Virus record (IMG/VR): IMGVR_UViG_3300026097_000876
Location: 1-64,000 of that record
Direction: 5' to 3' (one strand)
Length of the DNA: 64,000 nucleotides
Shown here: positions 3,462 through 33,068 of the stretch, one piece after another
Layout of the letters: the number at the start of each line of letters is the position of its first letter
Numbering within the stretch: the stretch's first letter is position 1
Program-made: the position numbers and the translations under genes
The notes under the pieces: generated by a model
Database searches by the model: none
Told to the model about the DNA's origin: nothing
What the model saw: only the letters and a program-made list of their open reading frames with translations

Positions 3462-4079
3462 TTAACGTGCTTCTGCCACTTTATCAGCAAGACCATATTC
3501 TACAGCTTCTTCTGCTGTTAAGAATGTATCAAACTTCATTGTTTCAAATAGCTCTTCGTAGCCTTTGCCTGCTGTGTTGTGTTTTACATACAGTTCGGTT
3601 AGGCGTTTGTTAATCTTTTTACTTTCTTCAAATGCACGTTTTGCATCTTCAAACTCAAGTTCTTGTACATGTACGCTACCGCTTGTGCCACGTGTACCTG
3701 AACTTACACGGTGAATCATTGTGCGGCTTTCTGGCAACACTACACGCTTGCCTGCTGTACCTGCTTGTGCTAGGAAACTACCCATTGAACATGCTTGGCC
3801 CATTACAATAGTTTGCACATCGCATTTGATATACTGCATTGTGTCGTAGATAGCAAGTCCTGCTGTTACAGCACCGCCTGGGCTATTAATATACAGATTA
3901 ATTGTTTTCTCTGGATTTTGTGATTCAAGAAAAAGTAACTGTGCTACAATTACATTGGCCATGTGATCTTCAACTGGACCGTTTAACATCACAATACGAT
4001 CCTTTAGCAACCGACTATAAATGTCGTATGCTCGTTCGCCTTTTGCTTCTTTTTCAACCACCATTGGAATTAGTGCCAT
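3462..4079 (-). CDS. clpP: ATP-dependent Clp protease proteolytic subunit
   Basis: [27 protein letters not shown] (Ser), MIH (His), [15 protein letters not shown]. Confidence 0.95.
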
Positions 4080-5588: not shown

Positions 5589-5630
5589 GTGTGCCTCTAT
5601 ATTTGCCTAACTGTTATATAAAGTATAGTG

Positions 5631-6101
5631 TCAGAATACAAGATTGTCAAGTGTTTCTTTTAGAAATTCAATTTCTTCTTTGTTGTGCTTCCAAGCAAAT
5701 CCGCGGCTTTTAAATAGTCCGAGGCTAGTGTCTATATCATAAACCTTGCCAAAGCTATTGGTCATATTTTCGCTACTAGTTGCTAGGATAGTGGTATCGT
5801 TGGCACGATAGAACTGCCACCATTCGTTGCACTCCATCAATGGACCATCTAGCATAGTAGTATAAGTTTTATGTCGATCTACCAAATGACTACGGTTGAT
5901 ACCCATGCGACTTACTTTCTTATAACCATGTTCAGCAAACACACGTAGGGCATCTTCGGTAATTCCTATCACTTGCCAATGGTCAGGACATAGCGACAAT
6001 AGCTCTCCTAGCATACGAGCCCGTTTACTAGTTGGTGCTCGCATATTGCGAATTAGCAAGTAATCGTGATATAAATCTTCTTTGTTCACTTTTGTGTCCA
6101 C
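5631..6101 (-). CDS. Hypothetical protein
   Basis: 156-aa ORF in the operon. Confidence 0.6.
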   Translation of the reverse strand: MDTKVNKEDLYHDYLLIRNMRAPTSKRARMLGELLSLCPDHWQVIGITEDALRVFAEHGYKKVSRMGINRSHLVDRHKTYTTMLDGPLMECNEWWQFYRANDTTILATSSENMTNSFGKVYDIDTSLGLFKSRGFAWKHNKEEIEFLKETLDNLVF

Positions 6102-6496
6102 TTCAAATGGCTAAGACGTTCTTGTTCGCACCAACGTATAAACAAACCTGTTTCACGCCCGTGTGCTTCAATCTCACTTGGCTTATCCCAATAGTCATAT
6201 TCGCTTTCGCTGCCTTGGTCAAGTTCGCCTAGCACGTATTGCTTTACGTGTACCATTTCGTGTGCTAGTGTAGTGAGCATATCACGCATGCCTAGTGTAC
6301 GCTTGAGTTCAACTTCAAACTCGCGATCATCTACGTGACAGCAATAACCGTAGGTTTCATCTTTGCTCATCAGGCGAAGATTGATTTCTACAGTAAGATT
6401 CTTGTGTCGAGGAAGGAATTTGTTAACACAAAAGAGTGCCATGCTTTCTGCATACTTCTTTTGATTGCGTGAACCGCCTGATACAATAATTTCCAT
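6086..6496 (-). CDS. HExxH zinc metallopeptidase-like protein
   Basis: TLAHEMVHVKQY...EIEAHG; own promoter at ~6530-6558. Confidence 0.75.
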   Translation of the reverse strand: MEIIVSGGSRNQKKYAESMALFCVNKFLPRHKNLTVEINLRLMSKDETYGYCCHVDDREFEVELKRTLGMRDMLTTLAHEMVHVKQYVLGELDQGSESEYDYWDKPSEIEAHGRETGLFIRWCEQERLSHLKWTQK

Positions 6497-6554: not shown

Positions 6555-7712
6555 TCAAGACTTTTTAAATATATAAATGCCTTCACTTTTGTATGCGTTT
6601 TTTAATTTGTTGTTGCCAGTTCCAGGACGGACGTTTAGTAACATATCTATCTGTTCTACATAGTCAAATCCAATTTTTTTACTAACATCCTTCCAGCGAT
6701 CTACAATTTTAAATTCTTCCTTGCCGTCCTTGTAGTCTGCAATATTAACAGCATACAGGCTTTCTTTTGCAAGAGCTGTGTGTAACATCTTAACAGTTGG
6801 CTCTACGTAATTATCAAACCATTCGTCTATTGTGCTACAATTGTTCATACATTGTGTATCTTCATCTGTGTATGTTTCTAAGTTAAAGTAAGGGGGACTA
6901 CTAAATGCGGCATCAAAAGAGCCCGGCTCTGGATCAAAGTCTTCACTAGGCATATGATTCATATCATACCCAGATCCAAGTCCTAATTCTTTCATTAGTT
7001 CGCCTAACGCAACTAACCCGTTGTAAGTTTTTGTATTCGGATCAATTCCTGTATAATGATAACGCATGTTACTAGTAAGAGATCCAATCATTCTTCCACC
7101 GTAGCCAGAGCTAAAATCTAGAACATTACCAAACATTTGAGGACAGATATACTCATACACAGCTCTAGCATTCATAGGTTTAAAGTTTGCAATAGTGCCT
7201 CCGCTTACAAGATCTAATGCTCGACGTATGTTTTGAGGTAATACACTTTTTTCGCCTTCATCTCTATACTTGTAGCAAAAGCTAATAGCACGTTTCAAAC
7301 GAGTGTCATCATAAAATCTTGCTCGCATACTAACCATTTTATCTTTACGAGTGTACGCTTCCTGCATATTAGGAAACCAAAAACGACTGAAAGTTTGTCC
7401 TGCGGTATTTCCTACAGCTATCTTTTTGTCTTTTACTTCGTGTGATTTTTGACTAATTGCTGTTAGTTCTTTTTTACAGCCTTCGAGTGTAAAGTAAGTA
7501 ATAGGAATAACGTTTACGCTTCTGTAAATATTAAAAACATCTTGTACAATTTGATCTCGACCGTTGTCATCTGCTTTGTTCCAGCGATCTTTAGTATAAG
7601 TCTTTAATTGTTCTTCCACACTTTCATAACCAGAATAAGAATCATTAGTCGGTGTCACATTCCATTCTTTACAGATATGATTGTAGTAATTTTCAATTAA
7701 AGTGTTTTGCAT
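6555..7712 (-). CDS. SAM-dependent amino-DNA methyltransferase (SPPY, N4-mC-like)
   Basis: Motif I VLDFSSGYGGR, GIDP, motif IV FSSPPYF. Confidence 0.85.
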   Translation of the reverse strand: MQNTLIENYYNHICKEWNVTPTNDSYSGYESVEEQLKTYTKDRWNKADDNGRDQIVQDVFNIYRSVNVIPITYFTLEGCKKELTAISQKSHEVKDKKIAVGNTAGQTFSRFWFPNMQEAYTRKDKMVSMRARFYDDTRLKRAISFCYKYRDEGEKSVLPQNIRRALDLVSGGTIANFKPMNARAVYEYICPQMFGNVLDFSSGYGGRMIGSLTSNMRYHYTGIDPNTKTYNGLVALGELMKELGLGSGYDMNHMPSEDFDPEPGSFDAAFSSPPYFNLETYTDEDTQCMNNCSTIDEWFDNYVEPTVKMLHTALAKESLYAVNIADYKDGKEEFKIVDRWKDVSKKIGFDYVEQIDMLLNVRPGTGNNKLKNAYKSEGIYIFKKS

Positions 7713-8868
7713 ATATTTCTTTTACCTGTTCCTTGTGCTTGTAATGTGGAATTTTTGACCAAAACCCTGTGCCGTTTGCCGGACTAGTTTCATTTAGACT
7801 TAGCACTAATCTTGTAATTTCTTTGCTATTGTAGTAATTAATTATTTCTTCTGCTTCTTGTTTGTCTTCAACCTGAATCCAAATTGCATTATGTCCAGTT
7901 CCGTATTCTGGACTAGCATATTTTAGTGTGCTCTTAGTATTTCGATTACCATTCTTACTGATAACAACTTTGTGTACACCAACGCCTTCACGGGGTGTAA
8001 TAATGCTTTTGTCTACACCAACTGTTTTCCTAAAGTCAGCGCCTTCAGTTCCTACTTGATAGATTAGTTGCACATCGCCGGGATTGTTAATAATTTTTTT
8101 ATCGTTGATATAATATGATCCATAATTTGCTGTAAATGTTTCAAAATTCTGTTCGAACAGTTCTTTCGCAAACATATAGGTCTTCAAATCAAATGCTGGA
8201 AGATATGTAGGATTATCAACAATAACACTAGTGTCATCCGTAATAAACTCTACACTATTATTTGTTTTTGCTGTGAAATACATAGCACAAATCGGTGTGG
8301 TAGTTTTAGTTACTCCTAAGAATCTATATTTTGTAATTTCTCTTATGTGTTGTTTCTTGGTGTAACGATTTTTATTCGGACGGGTAAGGACCAGTACGTG
8401 GTCGCATGTTTCTTTAAACTTGGATACAAAACTATTTGTTGTTAAAAAGTCTATAGCACTTAATACTACAGTATGTGAAGATTGAACGTCAATATAATCT
8501 TGTTGCAAAACATTCACATTAAATGTTTTATTGTTTAGTGCTTTTTTAAAATTAGTCTTACAAACTAATGTTTGTAAATTATCAATATCACTTGCATATA
8601 ATTGGTTACTAAAAATATGTTCGATACGTTCAATTTCGTCTGGAATAGCTGGCGATAGCGTAGACATTAAACGTTGAGCAAGATACATTAGTAATGTTCC
8701 ACTACCACACTGTGGATCAAAATATGTAGTAGCAGGATCCGAAAGTAAACTATTGTCCAATAAGTCAATTGCATTCTTAGCAAATTGTTCTTCAATAATA
8801 GTTTGTGATCCGCTACTGTCGTATGCTTTTAATTGTGCAAGACGATTGTTTATATTATTGATGGTCAA
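7693..8868 (-). CDS. N6-adenine methyltransferase-like protein with degenerate catalytic motif
   Basis: Motif I FDPQCGSGTLL and YASDID; expected NPPY position reads SAIDF. Confidence 0.65.
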   Translation of the reverse strand: MTINNINNRLAQLKAYDSSGSQTIIEEQFAKNAIDLLDNSLLSDPATTYFDPQCGSGTLLMYLAQRLMSTLSPAIPDEIERIEHIFSNQLYASDIDNLQTLVCKTNFKKALNNKTFNVNVLQQDYIDVQSSHTVVLSAIDFLTTNSFVSKFKETCDHVLVLTRPNKNRYTKKQHIREITKYRFLGVTKTTTPICAMYFTAKTNNSVEFITDDTSVIVDNPTYLPAFDLKTYMFAKELFEQNFETFTANYGSYYINDKKIINNPGDVQLIYQVGTEGADFRKTVGVDKSIITPREGVGVHKVVISKNGNRNTKSTLKYASPEYGTGHNAIWIQVEDKQEAEEIINYYNSKEITRLVLSLNETSPANGTGFWSKIPHYKHKEQVKEIYAKHFN

Positions 8869-11011
8869 AGTATTGTCCTAACGCTCGATTTGCTGAAACA
8901 GTGTTTATAGTATTCATTATACTTGACCATTCGTCAGTTGTCAATCCCGTAACTTGTGCTACAATGCCATTGTCTATATTTGTTACATCTTGTATCTTGT
9001 CAAATTCAAAGTCATTAGCCCAAGCAATGTCTGCTAGTTTATAAATCTGTTTTAAACTATAGCGAATACGTTGCATAGTTACATTTAACTCATCCTCATC
9101 TCTAGCTTCAGGTTGAGCCGAATTTGTCTTAGAACGTGTTTTATTTTTGCCTTCTTCAATATCGTTAGCATTAAATTGTGTTCTGCTACTATTACTATTA
9201 GCGTCTTTGTTTTTATCTTGTAACAGTGCAATAATGTTATCATCAATTTCATTTTGTTTAATACAAGATCCAATGCGATCAATATGGTTGGTAATATCTG
9301 ACAGGAAACGTTTTGAAATTTCTGCACCTGACATAATGTTCCATGCATTACCGTCATAATCATATACATCGCTTACTTCTAACCATTCACTAATTACTGA
9401 TTCAGCGGTACGTCCTGTAGTGTCTGCAACACGCTCGCAATAATCGTACACTACACTAACAAAACGTTCAGGCGCATAATCAAATACTACTACACTTTCT
9501 TTTCCGTCTGCCGGCGACTTACAACGGAAACTACCTTGAAAGTAATCTGCCGCACTCTTGTCGTTATTAATTTGATGTACACTCCACCATTCAGGTACAG
9601 TAGTGCCTTCTAAGAAGCGTCCGCATGTGAGTGTAATAGTGCCGGCGCCACCGTCATGGTCGTTGCGAGAAATTATATCTTTTACTTTTTGTATATTCTT
9701 AACGCCTTTTCCACTTGCATTAATAATCTTACGTTTACAAAAGAACGGATGTGCTTCTAATGCTTGTGCAAATAACCCAATTGCTTCCACGTTATCAGGC
9801 AATACAAATAGTGTATGACGGCTAAGTTTGTCAGCAACATTACTAAATCTTGATGGTGGTTTTTTAAAGTTTTTCATAATAAATGTAATAAACTCATTTA
9901 CACCCATTACATTTTTAAAAGAACCATTTTCAGTTGCAAACAATTTAGAAAATGTAAATCCTTCGTCGCCGAGTAGCTGTTTTACTTTTTCCGGAACATT
10001 AACTAATGCATAGTTGATGTCAGCACGTTTGCGAAACTGATCTGTTAAGAAGTTGTCTTCGTTTGCTTCTAAAAGTTCTTTCCGTATATTTTGTTCGTCG
10101 ATATAATCAAAATTATATGTATCTTCTGAAGCGTATCGTCCACTTAGCATAGTCTTGTACGGAGTTCCGCTTAATTCAACTTTAAGTTTAAATTTTAGAT
10201 TACTCCAAAGACGTTGTGTGTTGTCGGTTGATGTAGCATAATGTTGTTCATCAAAAAATACACTGTCCCATTGTGTGTCAAACATTTGTTTTAAGAACTT
10301 ATTATTACTACCAAAATGTTTATTGATAAACTGTAAACTAACAAACACAACATCAGTGCCTGTAAATTCCAAAGACTTAGTTGTTTTATAGTTGTGGTAT
10401 TTCCAGCCAGCATAGTCAATGTGGTTCTCTTCTCCACCCGGCAATAAACTTGCCCAACTATCATTAACACCTACTTTTGCTGTAACTACTAAAATTTTCT
10501 TAGCACCAAGTGCTCGTGCAATTTCATAGCTAATACGACACTTACCGGCTCGCATAATAGCATTTATAAGCAAGTCACTAGATACCGAACTACGAGTTAC
10601 GGCCCAGTCGATAATGTCTTGTTGATAATCAAAACTATTCCAATCTTCTAGAGCTTCTACGCCATTAATAAGACCGTTGAGTACTTCTCGAACTGTTTTA
10701 CTAGCATCCTTTGCTGTTATGCTGTCAGGAAAATCAAACCATTCACGGTTCTTATCGTCGCGACTTTTAAAATAACCTTTGCGTTGGAGAGTTTTATGTA
10801 ATGCAATATCAGTAATATGCGTAGGAACTTGTCTTGAATAAATTATTTCTAATTTTTCAGAATTCGATGTGCTATCTTGTTGCTCAACCCGTTCTTCTGC
10901 TGTAAGCATAGTCTGTCCAACTTTAAGTTTTACATTGAAAACTTCACCGTCGACTGTTGCTACGCTTTGTTTGCTTTGACTTTTTGTAGTGTAAAGATAG
11001 ATTGTGTTCAT
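8855..11011 (-). CDS. T5orf172/GIY-YIG-like domain fused to SF2 (Res-type) helicase
   Basis: IYLY...KVGQT...REWF N-terminus; MRAGK, FFDEQH, LSGTPY, FLEGTTVPEW. Confidence 0.8.
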   Translation of the reverse strand: MNTIYLYTTKSQSKQSVATVDGEVFNVKLKVGQTMLTAEERVEQQDSTSNSEKLEIIYSRQVPTHITDIALHKTLQRKGYFKSRDDKNREWFDFPDSITAKDASKTVREVLNGLINGVEALEDWNSFDYQQDIIDWAVTRSSVSSDLLINAIMRAGKCRISYEIARALGAKKILVVTAKVGVNDSWASLLPGGEENHIDYAGWKYHNYKTTKSLEFTGTDVVFVSLQFINKHFGSNNKFLKQMFDTQWDSVFFDEQHYATSTDNTQRLWSNLKFKLKVELSGTPYKTMLSGRYASEDTYNFDYIDEQNIRKELLEANEDNFLTDQFRKRADINYALVNVPEKVKQLLGDEGFTFSKLFATENGSFKNVMGVNEFITFIMKNFKKPPSRFSNVADKLSRHTLFVLPDNVEAIGLFAQALEAHPFFCKRKIINASGKGVKNIQKVKDIISRNDHDGGAGTITLTCGRFLEGTTVPEWWSVHQINNDKSAADYFQGSFRCKSPADGKESVVVFDYAPERFVSVVYDYCERVADTTGRTAESVISEWLEVSDVYDYDGNAWNIMSGAEISKRFLSDITNHIDRIGSCIKQNEIDDNIIALLQDKNKDANSNSSRTQFNANDIEEGKNKTRSKTNSAQPEARDEDELNVTMQRIRYSLKQIYKLADIAWANDFEFDKIQDVTNIDNGIVAQVTGLTTDEWSSIMNTINTVSANRALGQYFDHQ

Positions 11012-11031: not shown

Positions 11032-11079
11032 TGTGCCTGATTACTCTACTATAATATAATCAGGCACACGGTTTGTCAA
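11032..11079 (-). promoter_or_regulatory. Sigma70 promoter with -10 enclosed by a 12-bp inverted repeat
   Basis: TTGACA-17-TATTAT; arms TGTGCCTGATTA / TAATCAGGCACA. Confidence 0.75.
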
Positions 11080-11101: not shown

Positions 11102-11662
11102 TTAAATGTTTTGCAAATATTTTAATACTTTCTTTGGATCTGTTTCTCCGTAAGGATCGTCATCGTCACCGCAATCATTAATGCCTGGCTCTTCGAACCA
11201 TTTCTCCACTACACCGTCCTTGATTACTGCGGCATATCGCCAAGAGCGATTACCAAAGCCGACATGATCTTTGCATACTAACATGCCCATGCGCTGAGTA
11301 AGTTGACCCGAGCCGTCTGGAATAAATTTAATATGCTGAATACCTTGATCAATCATCCACTTGCGCATAACAAAAGTGTCGTTTACTGAAACAACATATA
11401 TTTCGTCAACGTCACAGTTGCGAATGTCATCGTACAATTCTTCAAATCCGGGTACTTGATACGTACTGCAGGTCGGAGTAAATGCTCCGGGTAGCGAAAA
11501 AACAACGATTCTCTTGTTGTTAAAAATTTCGTCAGTTGTAACTTCTTTCCAGTCAAATGGGTTTTCACTTCCATTGTTATTGTTTACATATGTTATAGGG
11601 TGTCCGTCTGTACGAACACGATAATGAAAAGTAACTGGTGGTACTTTTACGCCTTCTTTCAT
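11102..11662 (-). CDS. Peroxiredoxin (Prx5 family)
   Basis: FSLPGAFTPTCS, VSVNDTFVM, RSWRYA. Confidence 0.9.
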   Translation of the reverse strand: MKEGVKVPPVTFHYRVRTDGHPITYVNNNNGSENPFDWKEVTTDEIFNNKRIVVFSLPGAFTPTCSTYQVPGFEELYDDIRNCDVDEIYVVSVNDTFVMRKWMIDQGIQHIKFIPDGSGQLTQRMGMLVCKDHVGFGNRSWRYAAVIKDGVVEKWFEEPGINDCGDDDDPYGETDPKKVLKYLQNI

Positions 11663-11905
11663 TTATTTCTCCATTTTAAATAGTTTTCGCCCTAATGGCG
11701 ATATTGGTTCTTGTGGAACCGGTTTCTTCCCTGTTTGTTCTTCTACCATCATTAACAGTCTGGTAGCATGCCCGTGCTTTCTATACACGGGATTTACAAA
11801 AATATATTCTATTTCCGCTTGTTCATCGTATCTCACAAACGCAATAGTAGTATTAGTGTTCTTGAAAGTGATGACGCCATCACCATAGATGACGTCCCAC
11901 ATCAT
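11663..11905 (-). CDS. Small GNAT acetyltransferase
   Basis: IEYIFVNPVYRKHGHATRLL acetyl-CoA motif A. Confidence 0.7.
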   Translation of the reverse strand: MMWDVIYGDGVITFKNTNTTIAFVRYDEQAEIEYIFVNPVYRKHGHATRLLMMVEEQTGKKPVPQEPISPLGRKLFKMEK

Positions 11906-12609
11906 GATGCTCGTGCTAACAGCATGTCGCGAATGTGTCCAATTGCTCTAGTAGGATTAAGTCCTTTAGGACACACACTCACACAGTTCATAATACCTCT
12001 GCAACGAAACACCGAGAATGGATCTTCAAGGTTTGTTAATCGTTCTTCGGTGGCATCGTCTCTGGTATCTGCCAAGAAACGATAACTGGTGAGCAGTGCC
12101 TGTGGTCCAAGAAACTTGTCTGGATTCCACCAATAACTGGGACAGCTGGTTGAGCAACATGCACACATGATACACTCGTATAAGCCATCCAGTTTGGCAC
12201 GATCCTCTGGGCTCTGTAGCCTTTCCTGCGTGGGTGCTACAGTGCTGTTGGTAAGAGTGGGCATTACTTTTGCATAGCTCTTGTAGAACTGTGTCATGTC
12301 CACAACCAAGTCGCGAATAACTGGCATACCTGGAAGCGGACGAATAACCAACTTCTTGCCGTTAGGAGCAATCTCCGACACTGGAGTAATGCAAGCCAGT
12401 CCGTTCTTACCGTTCATGTTCACACCGTCACTACCACAAACACCCTCCCTGCAACTCCTACGGAAGGTGAGGGTTTGGTCCTGTTCTTTGGCACGAATCA
12501 TAACATCCAGCACCATTAAGTCCTTGTCTGCAGGGACATCTACTTCGACTTCCTGCATCCACGGTGCTCGATCCGTTTCCGGATTATAACGATAAACACT
12601 AACTTGCAT
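11902..12609 (-). CDS. sdhB: Succinate dehydrogenase iron-sulfur subunit
   Basis: RRSCREGVCGSD, CIMCACCSTSCPSYWW, FRCRGIMNCVSVCPKGL. Confidence 0.95.
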   Translation of the reverse strand: MQVSVYRYNPETDRAPWMQEVEVDVPADKDLMVLDVMIRAKEQDQTLTFRRSCREGVCGSDGVNMNGKNGLACITPVSEIAPNGKKLVIRPLPGMPVIRDLVVDMTQFYKSYAKVMPTLTNSTVAPTQERLQSPEDRAKLDGLYECIMCACCSTSCPSYWWNPDKFLGPQALLTSYRFLADTRDDATEERLTNLEDPFSVFRCRGIMNCVSVCPKGLNPTRAIGHIRDMLLARAS

Positions 12610-12619
12610 TGTGTTCTCC

Positions 12620-13054
12620 TTAGGCGTTTTCTTCTCGGTATGCGTCTAAAGTTTTCTTGAACTTGTTAGCATGCGAGCGTTCTGCTTTGGCTAGGGTTTC
12701 AAACCAATCAGCGATTTCATCATATCCTTCGTCGCGAGCAGTTTTAGCCATTCCCGGGTACATATCTGTGTATTCATGTGTTTCACCAGCAATCGCTGAC
12801 TCCAGTGCTTCTTCCACTGTCTTAGCGGCAAGCCCTGTCTCCGGATCACCTGAACCACCTTCGATTAGATATTCCATATGTCCATGTGCGTGTCCAGTTT
12901 CGCCTTCCGCAGTATTACGGAATACATTGGCTACATCTGGTGCACCTTGAATGTCTGCTTCGTTTGCGAAGTAGAGATAACGACGGTTTGCTTTTGACTC
13001 ACCTGCGAAAGCATCTTGCAATGCTTTTTCTGTTCCTGTTCCTTTCAATGACAT
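12620..13054 (-). CDS. Short-chain rubrerythrin (ferritin-like di-iron)
   Basis: AFAGES...ETGHAHGH...[15 protein letters not shown]...AERSH. Confidence 0.9.
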
Positions 13055-13200
13055 ATTTGTCTCCTTGTATCTTAAAAAGAATGTTGATCCTTCAACTTGT
13101 GAATAATCCTTCATTGTGTTATTGTATAGGTATTTACAATATAAATCAACCTAAAAATAGGTCAAGTCTATGTTATTTTTCAATGGATACAATAGATATT

Positions 13201-21224: not shown

Positions 21225-22385
21225 TTAGTAACCAACAGTTGATTTTTCGTACACAGCATTATGTGTCTGTGTACATCTAACAAATGTAGTACATTTGCTA
21301 AGATTCTTTAGTTTTACTGCGCCAGCGTAAGTACAAGTACTACGCAACCCACCAAGAATACCTTGAACAGTATTACCCACTGTTCCTCGGTAAGGCACAA
21401 GAACTTCTCTTCCTTCACTGCTTCTATACTCCTTAAGTCCGCCAAAGTGTTTGTCATTGGCTGCTGTTGAGCTCATGCCATAGAACTGTACAAACTTCTT
21501 TTCTTCAATAACACGACGACCTTCATCCCAGTCAGTTCCGCTCATCTTAGGAACAGGACGTAGCTCATCTGTGGCATAGCGTTTGACAATTACTTCTCCA
21601 CCACCTTCATCGTGTCCGGCAAGCATGCCGCCCAGCATTACAAAGTCAGCGCCAGCGGCAAATGCTTTGGCTACGTCACCAGGGCAAGTGCAACCCCCAT
21701 CAGCAATAATATGGCCGCCGAGTCCGTGAGCCGCATCGGCACACTCAATAACAGCCGAGAGTTGAGGATAACCAACACCTGTCTGAATGCGAGTAGTACA
21801 CACACTACCAGGACCAATCCCAACTTTAACAATATCTGCTCCTGCAAGAATTAACTCCTCTGTCATTTCACCAGTAACTACATTACCGGCGATGATTACA
21901 ATATTTGGATACGTCTTACGCATCTCTGACACAAAGTCACGAAAGCGATTTGAATATCCATTTGCTACATCAATGCAAACATATTTTAGATTGCCGTCTG
22001 CACGATCATATACGTCTTTAAACTTGTTCCAGTCACTGTCATTAATACCAATGCTCATTGCTACATGATTAGTGCGTAGATATTCGTCTGTGTCAAAAAA
22101 GTCTACAAGCTCGTCTGCCGTGTATGTTTTTACAAGACAGGTAAACATACCCAAACGTGCAAGTTCATCTGCCATTTCAAACGTACCAACACCGTCCATA
22201 TTGGCCGCCATAATAGGAATTCCTTTATAGTGAGCATTTAAAACATTGTCAGGAAATTCTATTTCGGAGTTACGAAATGTATATTCACGCACCAACTCAA
22301 CTTCTTTACGACTACCAAGTGTGCTACGTTTAGGACGTATCAGCACATCTTTGTAATCTAGTTTGCTTTCGGTTTCGATTCTCAT
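21225..22385 (-). CDS. guaC: GMP reductase
   Basis: [39 protein letters not shown]. Confidence 0.95.
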
Positions 22386-26729: not shown

Positions 26730-26795
26730 TGTATTGCTCCAGTTGTTTAACAATGTTTATATAGTATAGAATACTTTTATCGTTTTGTCAACCAT

Positions 26796-33017: not shown

Positions 33018-33068
33018 TATATTTTCCTTATGTCCTATATTATATCTTACTTTGTATTATTTGTCAAG

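What the first reader, a model, noticed from the sequence alone, without database searches (positions are those of the whole stretch)
6555..11011. Phage-borne R-M-like trio with a catalytically degenerate methyltransferase
Seen: one promoter drives three overlapping AT-rich genes: a GIY-YIG/T5orf172-SF2 helicase, an MTase-fold protein that keeps the SAM-binding motif (DPQCGSG) but reads SAIDF where NPPY is expected, and an intact SPPY methyltransferase. Known: Type ISP enzymes join nuclease, helicase, MTase and TRD in one chain. Inference: a split ISP-like system in which a dead MTase supplies specificity or senses SAM while a separate MTase protects self. It could be used against co-infecting phages or host DNA.
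Basis: partly seen in the sequence, partly recalled or inferred. Interest (0 to 1): 0.7.

Follow-up and report, generated by a model that had tools for sequence, protein, structure and literature searches.

The report
Phage helicase-nuclease with dead methyltransferase partner
A jumbo phage carries an optional two-gene cassette, a nuclease-helicase and a DNA-methyltransferase look-alike that has lost its catalytic motif, placed just upstream of the phage's own conserved methyltransferase; it looks like a split restriction-type system, but its function is untested.

Summary
Three overlapping minus-strand genes lie at 6555-11011.

- **A** (718 aa) has a T5orf172-like N-terminus and an intact SF2 helicase.
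- **B** (391 aa) has the full M.TaqI/CamA/Type ISP methyltransferase-plus-TRD fold. It keeps SAM motifs I and II but reads SAIDF exactly where relatives read NPPY.
- **C** (385 aa) is an intact methyltransferase with an invariant SPPY.

New findings:
- A-B-C occurs in the same order in all 25 related loci found through A or B.
- C is a core gene that usually stands alone (36 of 51 informative loci, and a complete Bacteroides phage).
- A-B is an accessory cassette, gained or lost at least 4-5 times on the C tree.
- A's conserved C-terminal tail is predicted to bind B (ipSAE 0.66, best control 0.00).
- Distant phages pair A-like helicases with B-like methyltransferases that keep NPPY, usually followed by another methyltransferase gene.
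- A second, perfect sigma70-like promoter lies inside A, upstream of B.

Best reading: this is a split Type ISP / YeeABC-like restriction-type module. B serves as a non-catalytic DNA-recognition subunit and C is the likely self-marking enzyme. The function itself is inferred, not shown.

The parts
8855..11011 (-). Gene A, 718 aa: T5orf172-like N-domain, SF2 (ResIII-type) helicase and a C-terminal tail
   Evidence: At least 199 homologues; motifs are invariant in the 21-sequence alignment A4.
10697..11011 (-). A residues 1-105: T5orf172/MUG113-like (GIY-YIG clan) putative nuclease domain. Conserved Y5, R41, H72, E90, W91. It is the fastest-evolving part of A.
9512..10633 (-). A residues 127-500: helicase core with RAGKC (Walker A), DEQH, SGTPY and QGSFRC
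8951..9301 (-). A residues 571-687: predicted B-binding tail, including the conserved RIRYSLKQIYKLADIAWA (648-665)
7693..8868 (-). Gene B, 391 aa: M.TaqI/Eco57I-like methyltransferase-plus-TRD fold with a degenerate catalytic motif
8698..8718 (-). B motif I, DPQCGSG (51-57), the SAM-binding loop. G55 is invariant; D51 is invariant in alignment A1 (N in two more divergent copies); D94 of motif II (8581-8598) is also invariant.
8446..8460 (-). B SAIDF (137-141), in the structural position of motif IV (NPPY in relatives)
7696..8271 (-). B residues 200-391: TaqI-like target-recognition domain. DNPTYLP (8197-8217) lies here and is not catalytic.
6555..7712 (-). Gene C, 385 aa: intact amino-methyltransferase with motif I LDFSSGYGG (7095-7121) and SPPY (6888-6899). 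It is a core gene of the phage group.
11051..11079 (-). Sigma70-like promoter upstream of A (TTGACA-17-TATTAT). Its -10 box sits inside a 12-bp inverted repeat (11032-11068).
8916..8944 (-). Perfect sigma70-like promoter (TTGACA-17-TATAAT) inside the 3' end of A, 48 nt upstream of B. It is kept at the same place in L010 and L012.

Best explanation
A and B form a two-subunit, ATP-dependent, restriction-type DNA-targeting module. It is in effect a Type ISP enzyme split into two chains, with a T5orf172/GIY-YIG-type nuclease in place of the Mrr-type one.

The proposed mechanism is as follows. B descends from an Eco57I/TaqI-like N6-adenine methyltransferase. It has lost the catalytic tetrapeptide but keeps the SAM pocket, the base-stacking aromatic residue and the TRD. 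It therefore acts as the site-recognition subunit, and probably also reads methylation state and binds SAM. A docks on B through its C-terminal tail, translocates on DNA and nicks or cuts it. Self DNA would be marked by C, the only intact nucleic-acid amino-methyltransferase recognisable in the genome. C is translationally coupled to B and shares an A-independent internal promoter with it. Unmarked DNA, meaning the host chromosome or competing elements, would be the target early in infection.

Shown here: the fold and motif states, synteny, the accessory status of A-B, and sigma70-like promoter motifs enriched far above chance. Predicted: the A-B complex. Inferred: nuclease action, the target, and protection by C.
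For: - B has the complete M.TaqI, CamA, LlaGI/LlaBIII, MmeI and PglX methyltransferase-TRD fold.
- Motif IV is replaced by [ASGN][ILV][DQ..][FY] in all 18 distinct B copies that sit next to C. Its first position varies, which is incompatible with catalysis. Motif I G55 and motif II D94 are invariant, and motif I D51 nearly so.
- B is full-length in all 72 close homologues.
- A-B complex: score 0.66, best of 3 controls 0.00. That mark was reached by 58 of 80 solved complexes and 2 of 110 mismatched pairs. Runs agree in at least 85% of contacts and partner pLDDT is at least 87. My own alignments were used, so the counts hold only roughly. The interface falls on family-invariant residues of both proteins.
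- A-like helicases pair with B-like methyltransferases in distant phages: with NPPY in L007, L112 (helicase one gene further upstream) and the gut phage PV036449 (also L008, whose 763-aa upstream protein matched neither A nor any helicase family), and with degenerate motifs in L009 and L114. So the pairing does not depend on B's catalysis.
- In 5 of 6 informative distant loci another methyltransferase-type gene follows B.
- A-B is patchy on the C tree, with at least 4-5 changes. Closest relatives have o136-C where others have o136-A-B-C.
- No other DNA methyltransferase family is found in the 262-kb record.
- Promoters.
- Cellular analogue: the YeeA/DnmA-YeeB-YeeC cluster, predicted to be an R-M system by Morgan et al. 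2009 (PMC2731913) and located in defence islands (PMC9973331).
Against: - No biochemical or genetic test exists.
- The T5orf172 assignment for the window's own A is below Pfam's threshold, and whether T5orf172 domains cut DNA is itself unsettled.
- C is conserved and autonomous. It occurs without A-B in about 70% of loci, so the adjacency could come from one old insertion rather than functional coupling.
- C's nearest solved folds are tRNA m2G methyltransferases, so a DNA substrate is not proven.
- No known defence model (PADLOC) matches the system.
- If C marks all related phages, A-B cannot exclude them.
- The record is only about 73% complete.
Confidence: 0.45

Rival explanations
1. A-B is a DNA-transaction machine for the phage's own replication, recombination or repair: a helicase-nuclease with a sequence-binding accessory protein. 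It has no role in telling self from non-self, and its place next to C is historical accident.
For: T5orf172 proteins of jumbo phages have been proposed to act in recombination (PMC7824862). C is independent of A-B. The A+B and C trees are largely congruent, as expected from plain vertical linkage.
Against: Close relatives do without A-B, which is unusual for a replication or repair core function. The partner is specifically a methyltransferase-TRD protein of the family used by R-M enzymes. A methyltransferase-type third gene recurs in distant loci.
Confidence: 0.2
2. B is still an enzyme, either a non-canonical methyltransferase or another SAM-dependent transferase. The trio is then a helicase-assisted double-modification module that protects phage DNA from host restriction, loosely like P1 DarB.
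For: SAM motifs I and II are conserved. The aromatic residue of motif IV is always F or Y, with an adjacent Asp in most copies, and some lineages read NLDY or NVDF. Erm/KsgA-type enzymes tolerate N-[IL]-P-Y (my own knowledge, not tested here).
Against: The first motif IV position is A, S, G or N, and both prolines are gone in every copy. Related helicase-linked copies have lost motif I altogether (L009/P0322, P0317, P0318). B evolves faster than A and C.
Confidence: 0.15
3. A-B is modification-dependent (Type IV-like). The degenerate pocket of B reads a modified base on foreign DNA and licenses A against it.
For: A pocket that keeps the stacking aromatic and binds a flipped base without catalysis could read either state. 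The N-domain of A evolves fast, which fits an arms race.
Against: The phage itself carries methyltransferase C next door, expressed with B, so it would have to avoid its own mark. Relatives with intact NPPY imply an ancestral logic in which modification protects.
Confidence: 0.1
4. B is a decaying remnant with no function of its own.
For: It has lost the catalytic motif and is the least conserved of the three (mean pairwise identity 46%, against 57% for A and 66% for C).
Against: B is full-length and uninterrupted in all 72 homologues and in all 25 loci. It has about 50 invariant residues, including the SAM-binding ones, and is predicted to bind A through conserved residues.
Confidence: 0.05

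Closest known systems
[quoted passage not shown]
   Same: Same domain order: nuclease, SF2 helicase-like ATPase, then a gamma-class methyltransferase and TRD. B's model aligns to their methyltransferase-TRD part at Z 15.7. Their architecture is described in PMC4666363.
   Different: Here the system is split into two genes. The nuclease is T5orf172/GIY-YIG-like rather than Mrr. The methyltransferase motif IV is destroyed, and a separate, unrelated methyltransferase lies downstream. The system is carried by a jumbo phage, not a bacterium or plasmid.
YeeA(DnmA)-YeeB-YeeC cluster of Bacillus subtilis and relatives
   Same: Same three parts: an MmeI/Eco57I-type methyltransferase with TRD, an SF2 helicase and a T5orf172/GIY-YIG protein. 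It was proposed to act as an R-M system (PMC2731913) and is enriched in defence islands (PMC9973331).
   Different: In the cellular cluster the helicase and T5orf172 are separate genes and the methyltransferase is active (m6A at GACGAG). Here they are fused in A and the methyltransferase is dead. Direct homology of A to YeeB or YeeC was not tested.
M.TaqI / CamA / M.BseCI (stand-alone gamma-class N6-adenine DNA methyltransferases)
   Same: B shares their whole two-domain fold: Z 19.6 over 314 residues with M.TaqI, and Foldseek E 1e-15 with CamA.
   Different: They carry NPPY and methylate DNA alone. B reads SAIDF and is tied to a helicase.
Eco57I-type (Type IIG) systems with a bifunctional R-M protein plus a separate methyltransferase
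   Same: The logic of a recognition/methyltransferase-fold protein joined to the cutting function, plus a second stand-alone methyltransferase for full protection. Pfam Eco57I matches B's NPPY-bearing relatives.
   Different: They have no helicase, and the methyltransferase domain of the R-M protein is active (my own knowledge).
Virus-borne R-M systems (phage P1 EcoP1I Type III; chlorovirus R-M used against host DNA)
   Same: Precedent for a virus carrying restriction plus a self-marking methyltransferase (my own knowledge, not tested here).
   Different: They use different enzyme families, with active methyltransferases as the specificity subunits.

Membership tests
Type ISP R-M | Single polypeptide carrying nuclease, helicase, coupler, methyltransferase and TRD | tested here: not met
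   Two ORFs, A and B, with a 14-nt overlap. They are also split in all relatives.
Type ISP R-M | Mrr/PD-(D/E)xK nuclease domain | tested here: not met
   The N-domain matches the T5orf172/MUG113 (GIY-YIG) clan instead.
Type ISP R-M | SF2 helicase-like ATPase with intact motifs | tested here: met
   ResIII E 3e-8. GKC, DEQH, SGTP and QxxxR are invariant in A4.
Type ISP R-M | Active gamma-class N6-adenine methyltransferase (NPPY/F) | tested here: not met
   SAIDF sits at the motif IV position.
Type ISP R-M | TRD following the methyltransferase domain | tested here: met
   The model aligns through the TRD of LlaGI, LlaBIII and M.TaqI.
YeeA/DnmA-YeeB-YeeC cluster | Co-located MmeI/Eco57I-type methyltransferase-TRD, SF2 helicase and T5orf172 protein | tested here: met
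   All three domain types are present, with helicase and T5orf172 fused. Orthology to YeeB or YeeC was not tested.
YeeA/DnmA-YeeB-YeeC cluster | Active methyltransferase that modifies the host genome | tested here: not met
   Motif IV is degenerate in B.
Gamma-class N6-adenine DNA methyltransferase (B) | Class I fold with motif I (xxGxG) and the motif II acidic residue | tested here: met
   DPQCGSG and D94 are invariant in alignment A1 (D51 reads N in two more divergent copies). Strand order is canonical in the pLDDT-92 model.
Gamma-class N6-adenine DNA methyltransferase (B) | (D/N/S)PP(Y/F/W) after strand beta-4 | tested here: not met
   The only NPxY-like string (DNPTYLP) lies in the TRD.
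Gamma-class N6-adenine DNA methyltransferase (B) | Methyl transfer to DNA | not testable with these tools
   Needs an enzyme assay or a methylome.
T5orf172 / GIY-YIG clan (A N-domain) | Pfam PF10544 match above the cut-off | tested here: inconclusive
   The window's A scores below threshold. 5 of 21 relatives match at E<=0.01. The L007 homologue scores 27 bits against a 20-bit cut-off.
Exocyclic-amine (N4-C / N6-A) DNA methyltransferase (C) | Motif I plus an intact (S/D/N)PP(Y/F) | tested here: met
   LDFSSGYGG and SPPY are invariant.
Exocyclic-amine (N4-C / N6-A) DNA methyltransferase (C) | DNA rather than RNA as substrate | tested here: inconclusive
   The full-length fold equals an AFDB cluster auto-named N4-cytosine DNA methyltransferase (TM 0.82). 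However, the best solved folds are the tRNA m2G enzymes Trm11 and TrmN.
Known anti-phage defence systems (PADLOC) | Match to a system's protein models | tested here: not met
   Only weak domain-level hits: PDC-S57, mad2, PglX, MTase_II.

The most novel reading that the evidence does not exclude
B is a methyltransferase turned 'reader'. It flips a base into a pocket that can no longer methylate, senses whether C's mark is present, and licenses the A translocase-nuclease to destroy unmarked DNA. This would be a restriction-type weapon that a virulent jumbo phage uses offensively against the host chromosome or rival elements, with writer and reader split between two unrelated methyltransferase folds.
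Probability: 0.3. Interest if true: 0.75.

Novelty: new variant of a known kind. Interest (0 to 1): 0.55.

Why it matters
If the reading is right, it shows how an R-M enzyme can be taken apart. Catalysis moves to a separate methyltransferase, while the old methyltransferase-TRD body survives as a pure recognition or sensing subunit for a helicase-nuclease. It would also give a phage-side example of restriction used during infection.

The comparative series found here is a natural set of intermediates for testing how methyltransferase pseudoenzymes arise. It includes NPPY-bearing, motif-IV-dead and motif-I-dead B relatives, all next to helicases, often followed by a 160-aa 'half-methyltransferase'.

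Practically, the A-B pair is a compact, uncharacterised, sequence-guided translocase-nuclease candidate.

Tried and rejected
- **Hidden motif IV.** DNPTYLP (218-224; DNPPFLP in some homologues) looked like NPPY. The model puts it after the Rossmann core, in the TRD, and relatives with a real NPPY have unrelated residues there. Rejected.
- **Nucleotide search** of the trio against 50,697 phage records found no match.
- **The search for related loci with B alone** in IMG/VR found nothing. The alignments of A and of C did work.
- **A in 185,579 prokaryote genomes**: no relative found by the two patterns used. This is no evidence of absence.
- **Sequence searches of the PDB** with profiles of A, B and C gave nothing useful. 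NCBIfam gave nothing.
- **PF10544 in the phage's own genome** via the genome search did not register.
- **Hma** (helicase, m5C methylase, ATPase) was considered and set aside because its parts differ.
- **B as the specificity subunit for C** is unlikely to be required, because C occurs alone in most loci and in the complete Bacteroides phage DAC16, which has neither A nor B. A B-C complex was not folded because only one job was available.
- **An error corrected.** My first identity table was wrong because insert columns were mishandled. It was redone.


Full report
**What is there**

The window is the first 64 kb of a 261.8-kb IMG/VR virus record, a jumbo phage estimated at 73% complete. Three minus-strand ORFs fill 6555-11011: A (8855-11011, 718 aa), B (7693-8868, 391 aa, TTG start) and C (6555-7712, 385 aa). 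A and B overlap by 14 nt, and B and C by 20 nt. This is the most AT-rich 4.5-kb stretch of the window, at 35.1% GC against a mean of 40.0%.

**Gene A**

Pfam finds ResIII at residues 127-285 (E 3e-8). In an alignment of 21 homologues of 44-100% identity, the helicase motifs are invariant: G156-K157-C158, D254-E-Q-H257, S281-G-T-P284 and Q492..R496. So is a C-terminal block, RIRY.LKQIYKL.DIAW at 648-665.

The N-terminal 105 residues are T5orf172/MUG113-like, but only weakly by sequence:
- MUG113 scores E 0.008.
- PF10544 matches 5 of 21 members, best E 1e-4.
- PADLOC PDC-S57 scores E 6e-5.
- 96 of 100 named language-model neighbours are T5orf172/MUG113 clusters.
- A full-length homologue in a distant phage (L007, 30% identity over 1-711) passes the Pfam cut-off, 27 bits against 20, across the whole domain.

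Y5, R41, H72 and E90 are conserved. They match positions that are catalytic in GIY-YIG enzymes; that correspondence rests on my own knowledge and not on a test here.

**Gene B**

There are 72 homologues of 40-100% identity, all about 390 aa and uninterrupted. AlphaFold gives a confident model (pLDDT 92.2, pTM 0.88) with a canonical class I methyltransferase strand order followed by a second domain.

The whole two-domain fold matches:
- M.TaqI (VIA Z 19.6, 314 residues)
- CamA (Z 18; Foldseek E 1e-15)
- M.BseCI
- the methyltransferase-TRD parts of Type ISP LlaGI/LlaBIII (Z 15.7), MmeI, PglX and DrdV

Viral and AFDB neighbours are 'M.TaqI-like' or 'Eco57I' adenine methyltransferases.

Motif I (D51-P-Q-C-G55-S-G) and the motif II acid D94 are invariant in the 27-sequence alignment; two more divergent copies read N at position 51. 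SAIDF (137-141) directly follows strand beta-4 (134-138), which is the motif IV position. A profile search of 1.84 billion proteins found remote relatives. When aligned, P0316, P0338, P0398, P0336, P0329, P0369 and P0378 read GNPPY in exactly these columns.

Across the 18 distinct B copies that sit beside C, the tetrapeptide is [A/S/G/N][I/L/V][D/Q][F/Y]. Both prolines are gone and the first, normally catalytic, position varies freely. Only the aromatic residue is kept. DNPTYLP at 218-224 looked like a candidate hidden NPPY. It lies in the second domain and aligns to unrelated residues in the NPPY-bearing relatives.

So B is a TaqI/Eco57I-type adenine methyltransferase whose catalytic motif is lost while the SAM pocket and TRD are kept. 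Loss of methyl transfer is an inference from the motif, not a measurement.

**Gene C**

C has more than 749 homologues and is extremely conserved: 61-86% identity among the 120 listed. LDFSSGYGGRM, YTGIDPN and FSSPPYFNLE are invariant.

The model (pLDDT 84) matches, over its full length, an AFDB cluster auto-named N4-cytosine DNA methyltransferase (TM 0.82, 26% identity). The best solved structures are the m2G tRNA methyltransferases Trm11, TrmN and Trm14, through the catalytic domain only. C is therefore an intact exocyclic-amine methyltransferase. A DNA substrate is likely but not proven.

No N6_Mtase, N6_N4_Mtase, Dam-type or C5 methyltransferase family was found elsewhere in the 262-kb record.

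**Co-occurrence**

Searching IMG/VR with the A alignment gave 22 loci, and all carry A-B-C in the same order with overlapping or abutting genes. Three further metagenome contigs do as well. B there is as low as 31% identical to the window's copy.

Searching with C gave 80 loci. Of the 51 with at least 3.5 kb upstream, 15 have A-B-C and 36 have C alone. The complete 178-kb Bacteroides phage DAC16 has C (36% identity) but neither A nor B.

Close relatives differ by a clean indel:
- L034 and L041 (C 77-79% identical) read peroxiredoxin ... o136 - C.
- L036 reads o136 - A - B - C.

On a 67-sequence tree of C, the presence of A-B needs at least 5 changes, 4 of them forced by well-supported branches. 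Trees of A+B and of C agree for the shallow clades and disagree at some deeper nodes.

So C is a core gene of this phage group. A-B is an accessory cassette that has long travelled next to C and has been lost, or exchanged, repeatedly. B evolves fastest: mean pairwise identity is 57% for A, 46% for B and 66% for C. Within A, the N-terminal domain is fastest, at 17-37% where the helicase core is 50-67%.

**The A-B pair beyond this clade**

- In L007, an A-like T5orf172-helicase (702 aa) is followed, stop overlapping start, by a B relative with intact NPPY.
- In L114/L115, a close A relative (E 3e-188) is followed by a B relative reading NVPF.
- In L112, L008 and L009, large upstream proteins precede B relatives reading NPPY, NPPY and NSDF; those of L112 and L009 are ResIII/DEAD helicases (in L112 one gene further upstream), while L008's 763-aa protein matched neither A nor any Pfam family. 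The L009 copy has also lost motif I.
- In a complete gut phage (PV036449), an Eco57I-like methyltransferase with GNPPYQ lies directly upstream of a 974-aa A-like protein. That methyltransferase shares B's characteristic IPD..ERL.HIF..QL block.
- In five of six informative distant loci, the gene after B is a conserved 156-164-aa 'half-methyltransferase'. It has motifs X and I-III, then [S/T][D/P]PY, then a stop, and is 50-75% identical between loci. It is absent from the window's genome.

The association of this helicase with this methyltransferase subfamily is therefore old and does not depend on B being catalytic. A third methyltransferase-type gene is the rule.

**Physical link**

A(120-718) plus B were folded with controls. 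The score was 0.66 and the best of three controls was 0.00. That mark was reached by 58 of 80 solved complexes and 2 of 110 mismatched pairs. The three runs share at least 85% of contacts, and the partner's pLDDT is at least 87. My own alignments were used, so those counts hold only roughly.

The interface joins A residues 571-577, 651-667 and 682-687 to B helices 8-20 and 98-114. On both sides these are family-conserved residues. This supports binding but does not show it.

**Expression signals**

TTGACA-17-TATAAT with at most one mismatch occurs 12 times in the window against 1.09 expected, and 10 of the 12 are on the gene-bearing minus strand. One lies upstream of A (11079-11051). A perfect one (8944-8916) lies inside the 3' end of A, 48 nt before B. 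A third (6558-6530) follows C and serves the next gene.

The internal site is kept at the same place in the closest relatives. Another clade has one 143-149 nt before B. Many relatives also have a promoter before A. So B and C can be made without A, as expected if the recognition and marking functions must precede or exceed the nuclease. That last point is inference.

**Interpretation**

The best-supported model is a split Type ISP-like, or fused YeeB/YeeC plus YeeA-like, restriction-type module. In it B is the non-catalytic recognition subunit and C the probable self-marking enzyme.

Morgan et al. proposed the same logic for the cellular YeeA-type MmeI homologues flanked by a DEAD helicase and a GIY-YIG protein (PMC2731913). 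Those clusters sit in defence islands (PMC9973331). The Type ISP architecture is described in PMC4666363.

Rival models are laid out in the Rival explanations section with what would refute each:
- a recombination or repair machine with accidental synteny
- a still-active, non-canonical B in a double-modification module
- a modification-dependent reader
- simple decay

The trio is not one unit, the promoter count was wrong, and every functional step beyond fold, motif state, synteny and predicted binding remains to be tested.

**Novelty**

The kind is known: R-M-like nuclease-helicase plus methyltransferase-TRD. The variant does not match any characterised system that I could find in PADLOC, Pfam, NCBIfam, the PDB or the paper library. 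It combines a T5orf172-helicase fusion, a pseudo-methyltransferase specificity subunit, an unrelated stand-alone methyltransferase, and carriage as an optional cassette in jumbo phages.

Noticed in passing
L007:7392-7835, L008:7136-7615, L009:3808-4302, L112:6089-6571, L114:6241-6711, L113:1243-1443: A conserved 156-164-aa 'half-methyltransferase' is encoded right after B-like genes in distant phages. It has motif X FTPTPLV, motif I DPSCGDGQFL, YGVDL and NIVCAD, then [S/T][D/P]PY and a stop. It is 50-75% identical between loci and too short for a full Rossmann fold, so it may complement B-like proteins that lost their own N-half motifs.
   Followed up: partly
L007:7392-8623: A 147-aa N-half (motifs X-III) is followed by a 263-aa ORF that begins MKFDCVIGNPPYQ (motif IV plus TRD, Pfam Eco57I). 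This looks like a split or frameshifted Eco57I-like methyltransferase. A Dam-type methyltransferase also lies upstream of the A-like gene in the same locus.
   Followed up: partly
window 11032-11068: A perfect 12-bp inverted repeat (TGTGCCTGATTA / TAATCAGGCACA) brackets the -10 box of the promoter upstream of A and is unique in the window. The closest relative with A-B (L012) has an imperfect version whose two mismatches would be G-U pairs. It could be an operator or an RNA hairpin.
   Followed up: partly
window, 12 sites (e.g. 1092-1120, 2427-2455, 5622-5650, 26763-26791, 33039-33067): Near-consensus sigma70-type promoters (TTGACA-17-TATAAT, at most 1 mismatch) occur 12 times against 1.09 expected, and 10 are on the minus strand ahead of genes. 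This is an early-gene region read by host RNA polymerase.
   Followed up: partly
window 11102-13114 and 21225-22385, 3462-4079: The trio is surrounded by host-like metabolic and stress genes: a peroxiredoxin (Redoxin, E 2e-22), a succinate dehydrogenase/fumarate reductase-type Fe-S subunit (Fer2_3 plus 4Fe-4S), and an IMPDH/GMP-reductase. A rubrerythrin-like ORF (12620-13114) and a ClpP-like ORF (3462-4079) were judged by eye only.
   Followed up: partly
window 6086-6496: A 136-aa ORF has an HExxH-like LAHEMVH motif (weak Peptidase_M30 hit). It lies downstream of C here but immediately upstream of C, or of A-B-C, in relatives L034, L041 and L036. This indicates a local rearrangement around the cassette.
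   Followed up: no
L080:997-3410: One IMG/VR contig carries two C-family genes in tandem (419 aa and 384 aa).
   Followed up: no
window 6555-11011: The only public run holding this stretch is labelled a soil metagenome. At least one homologue cluster of A and one of C (P0203, P0085) also carry Tara Oceans records, which suggests marine relatives. The habitat and host of this phage were not established.
   Followed up: no
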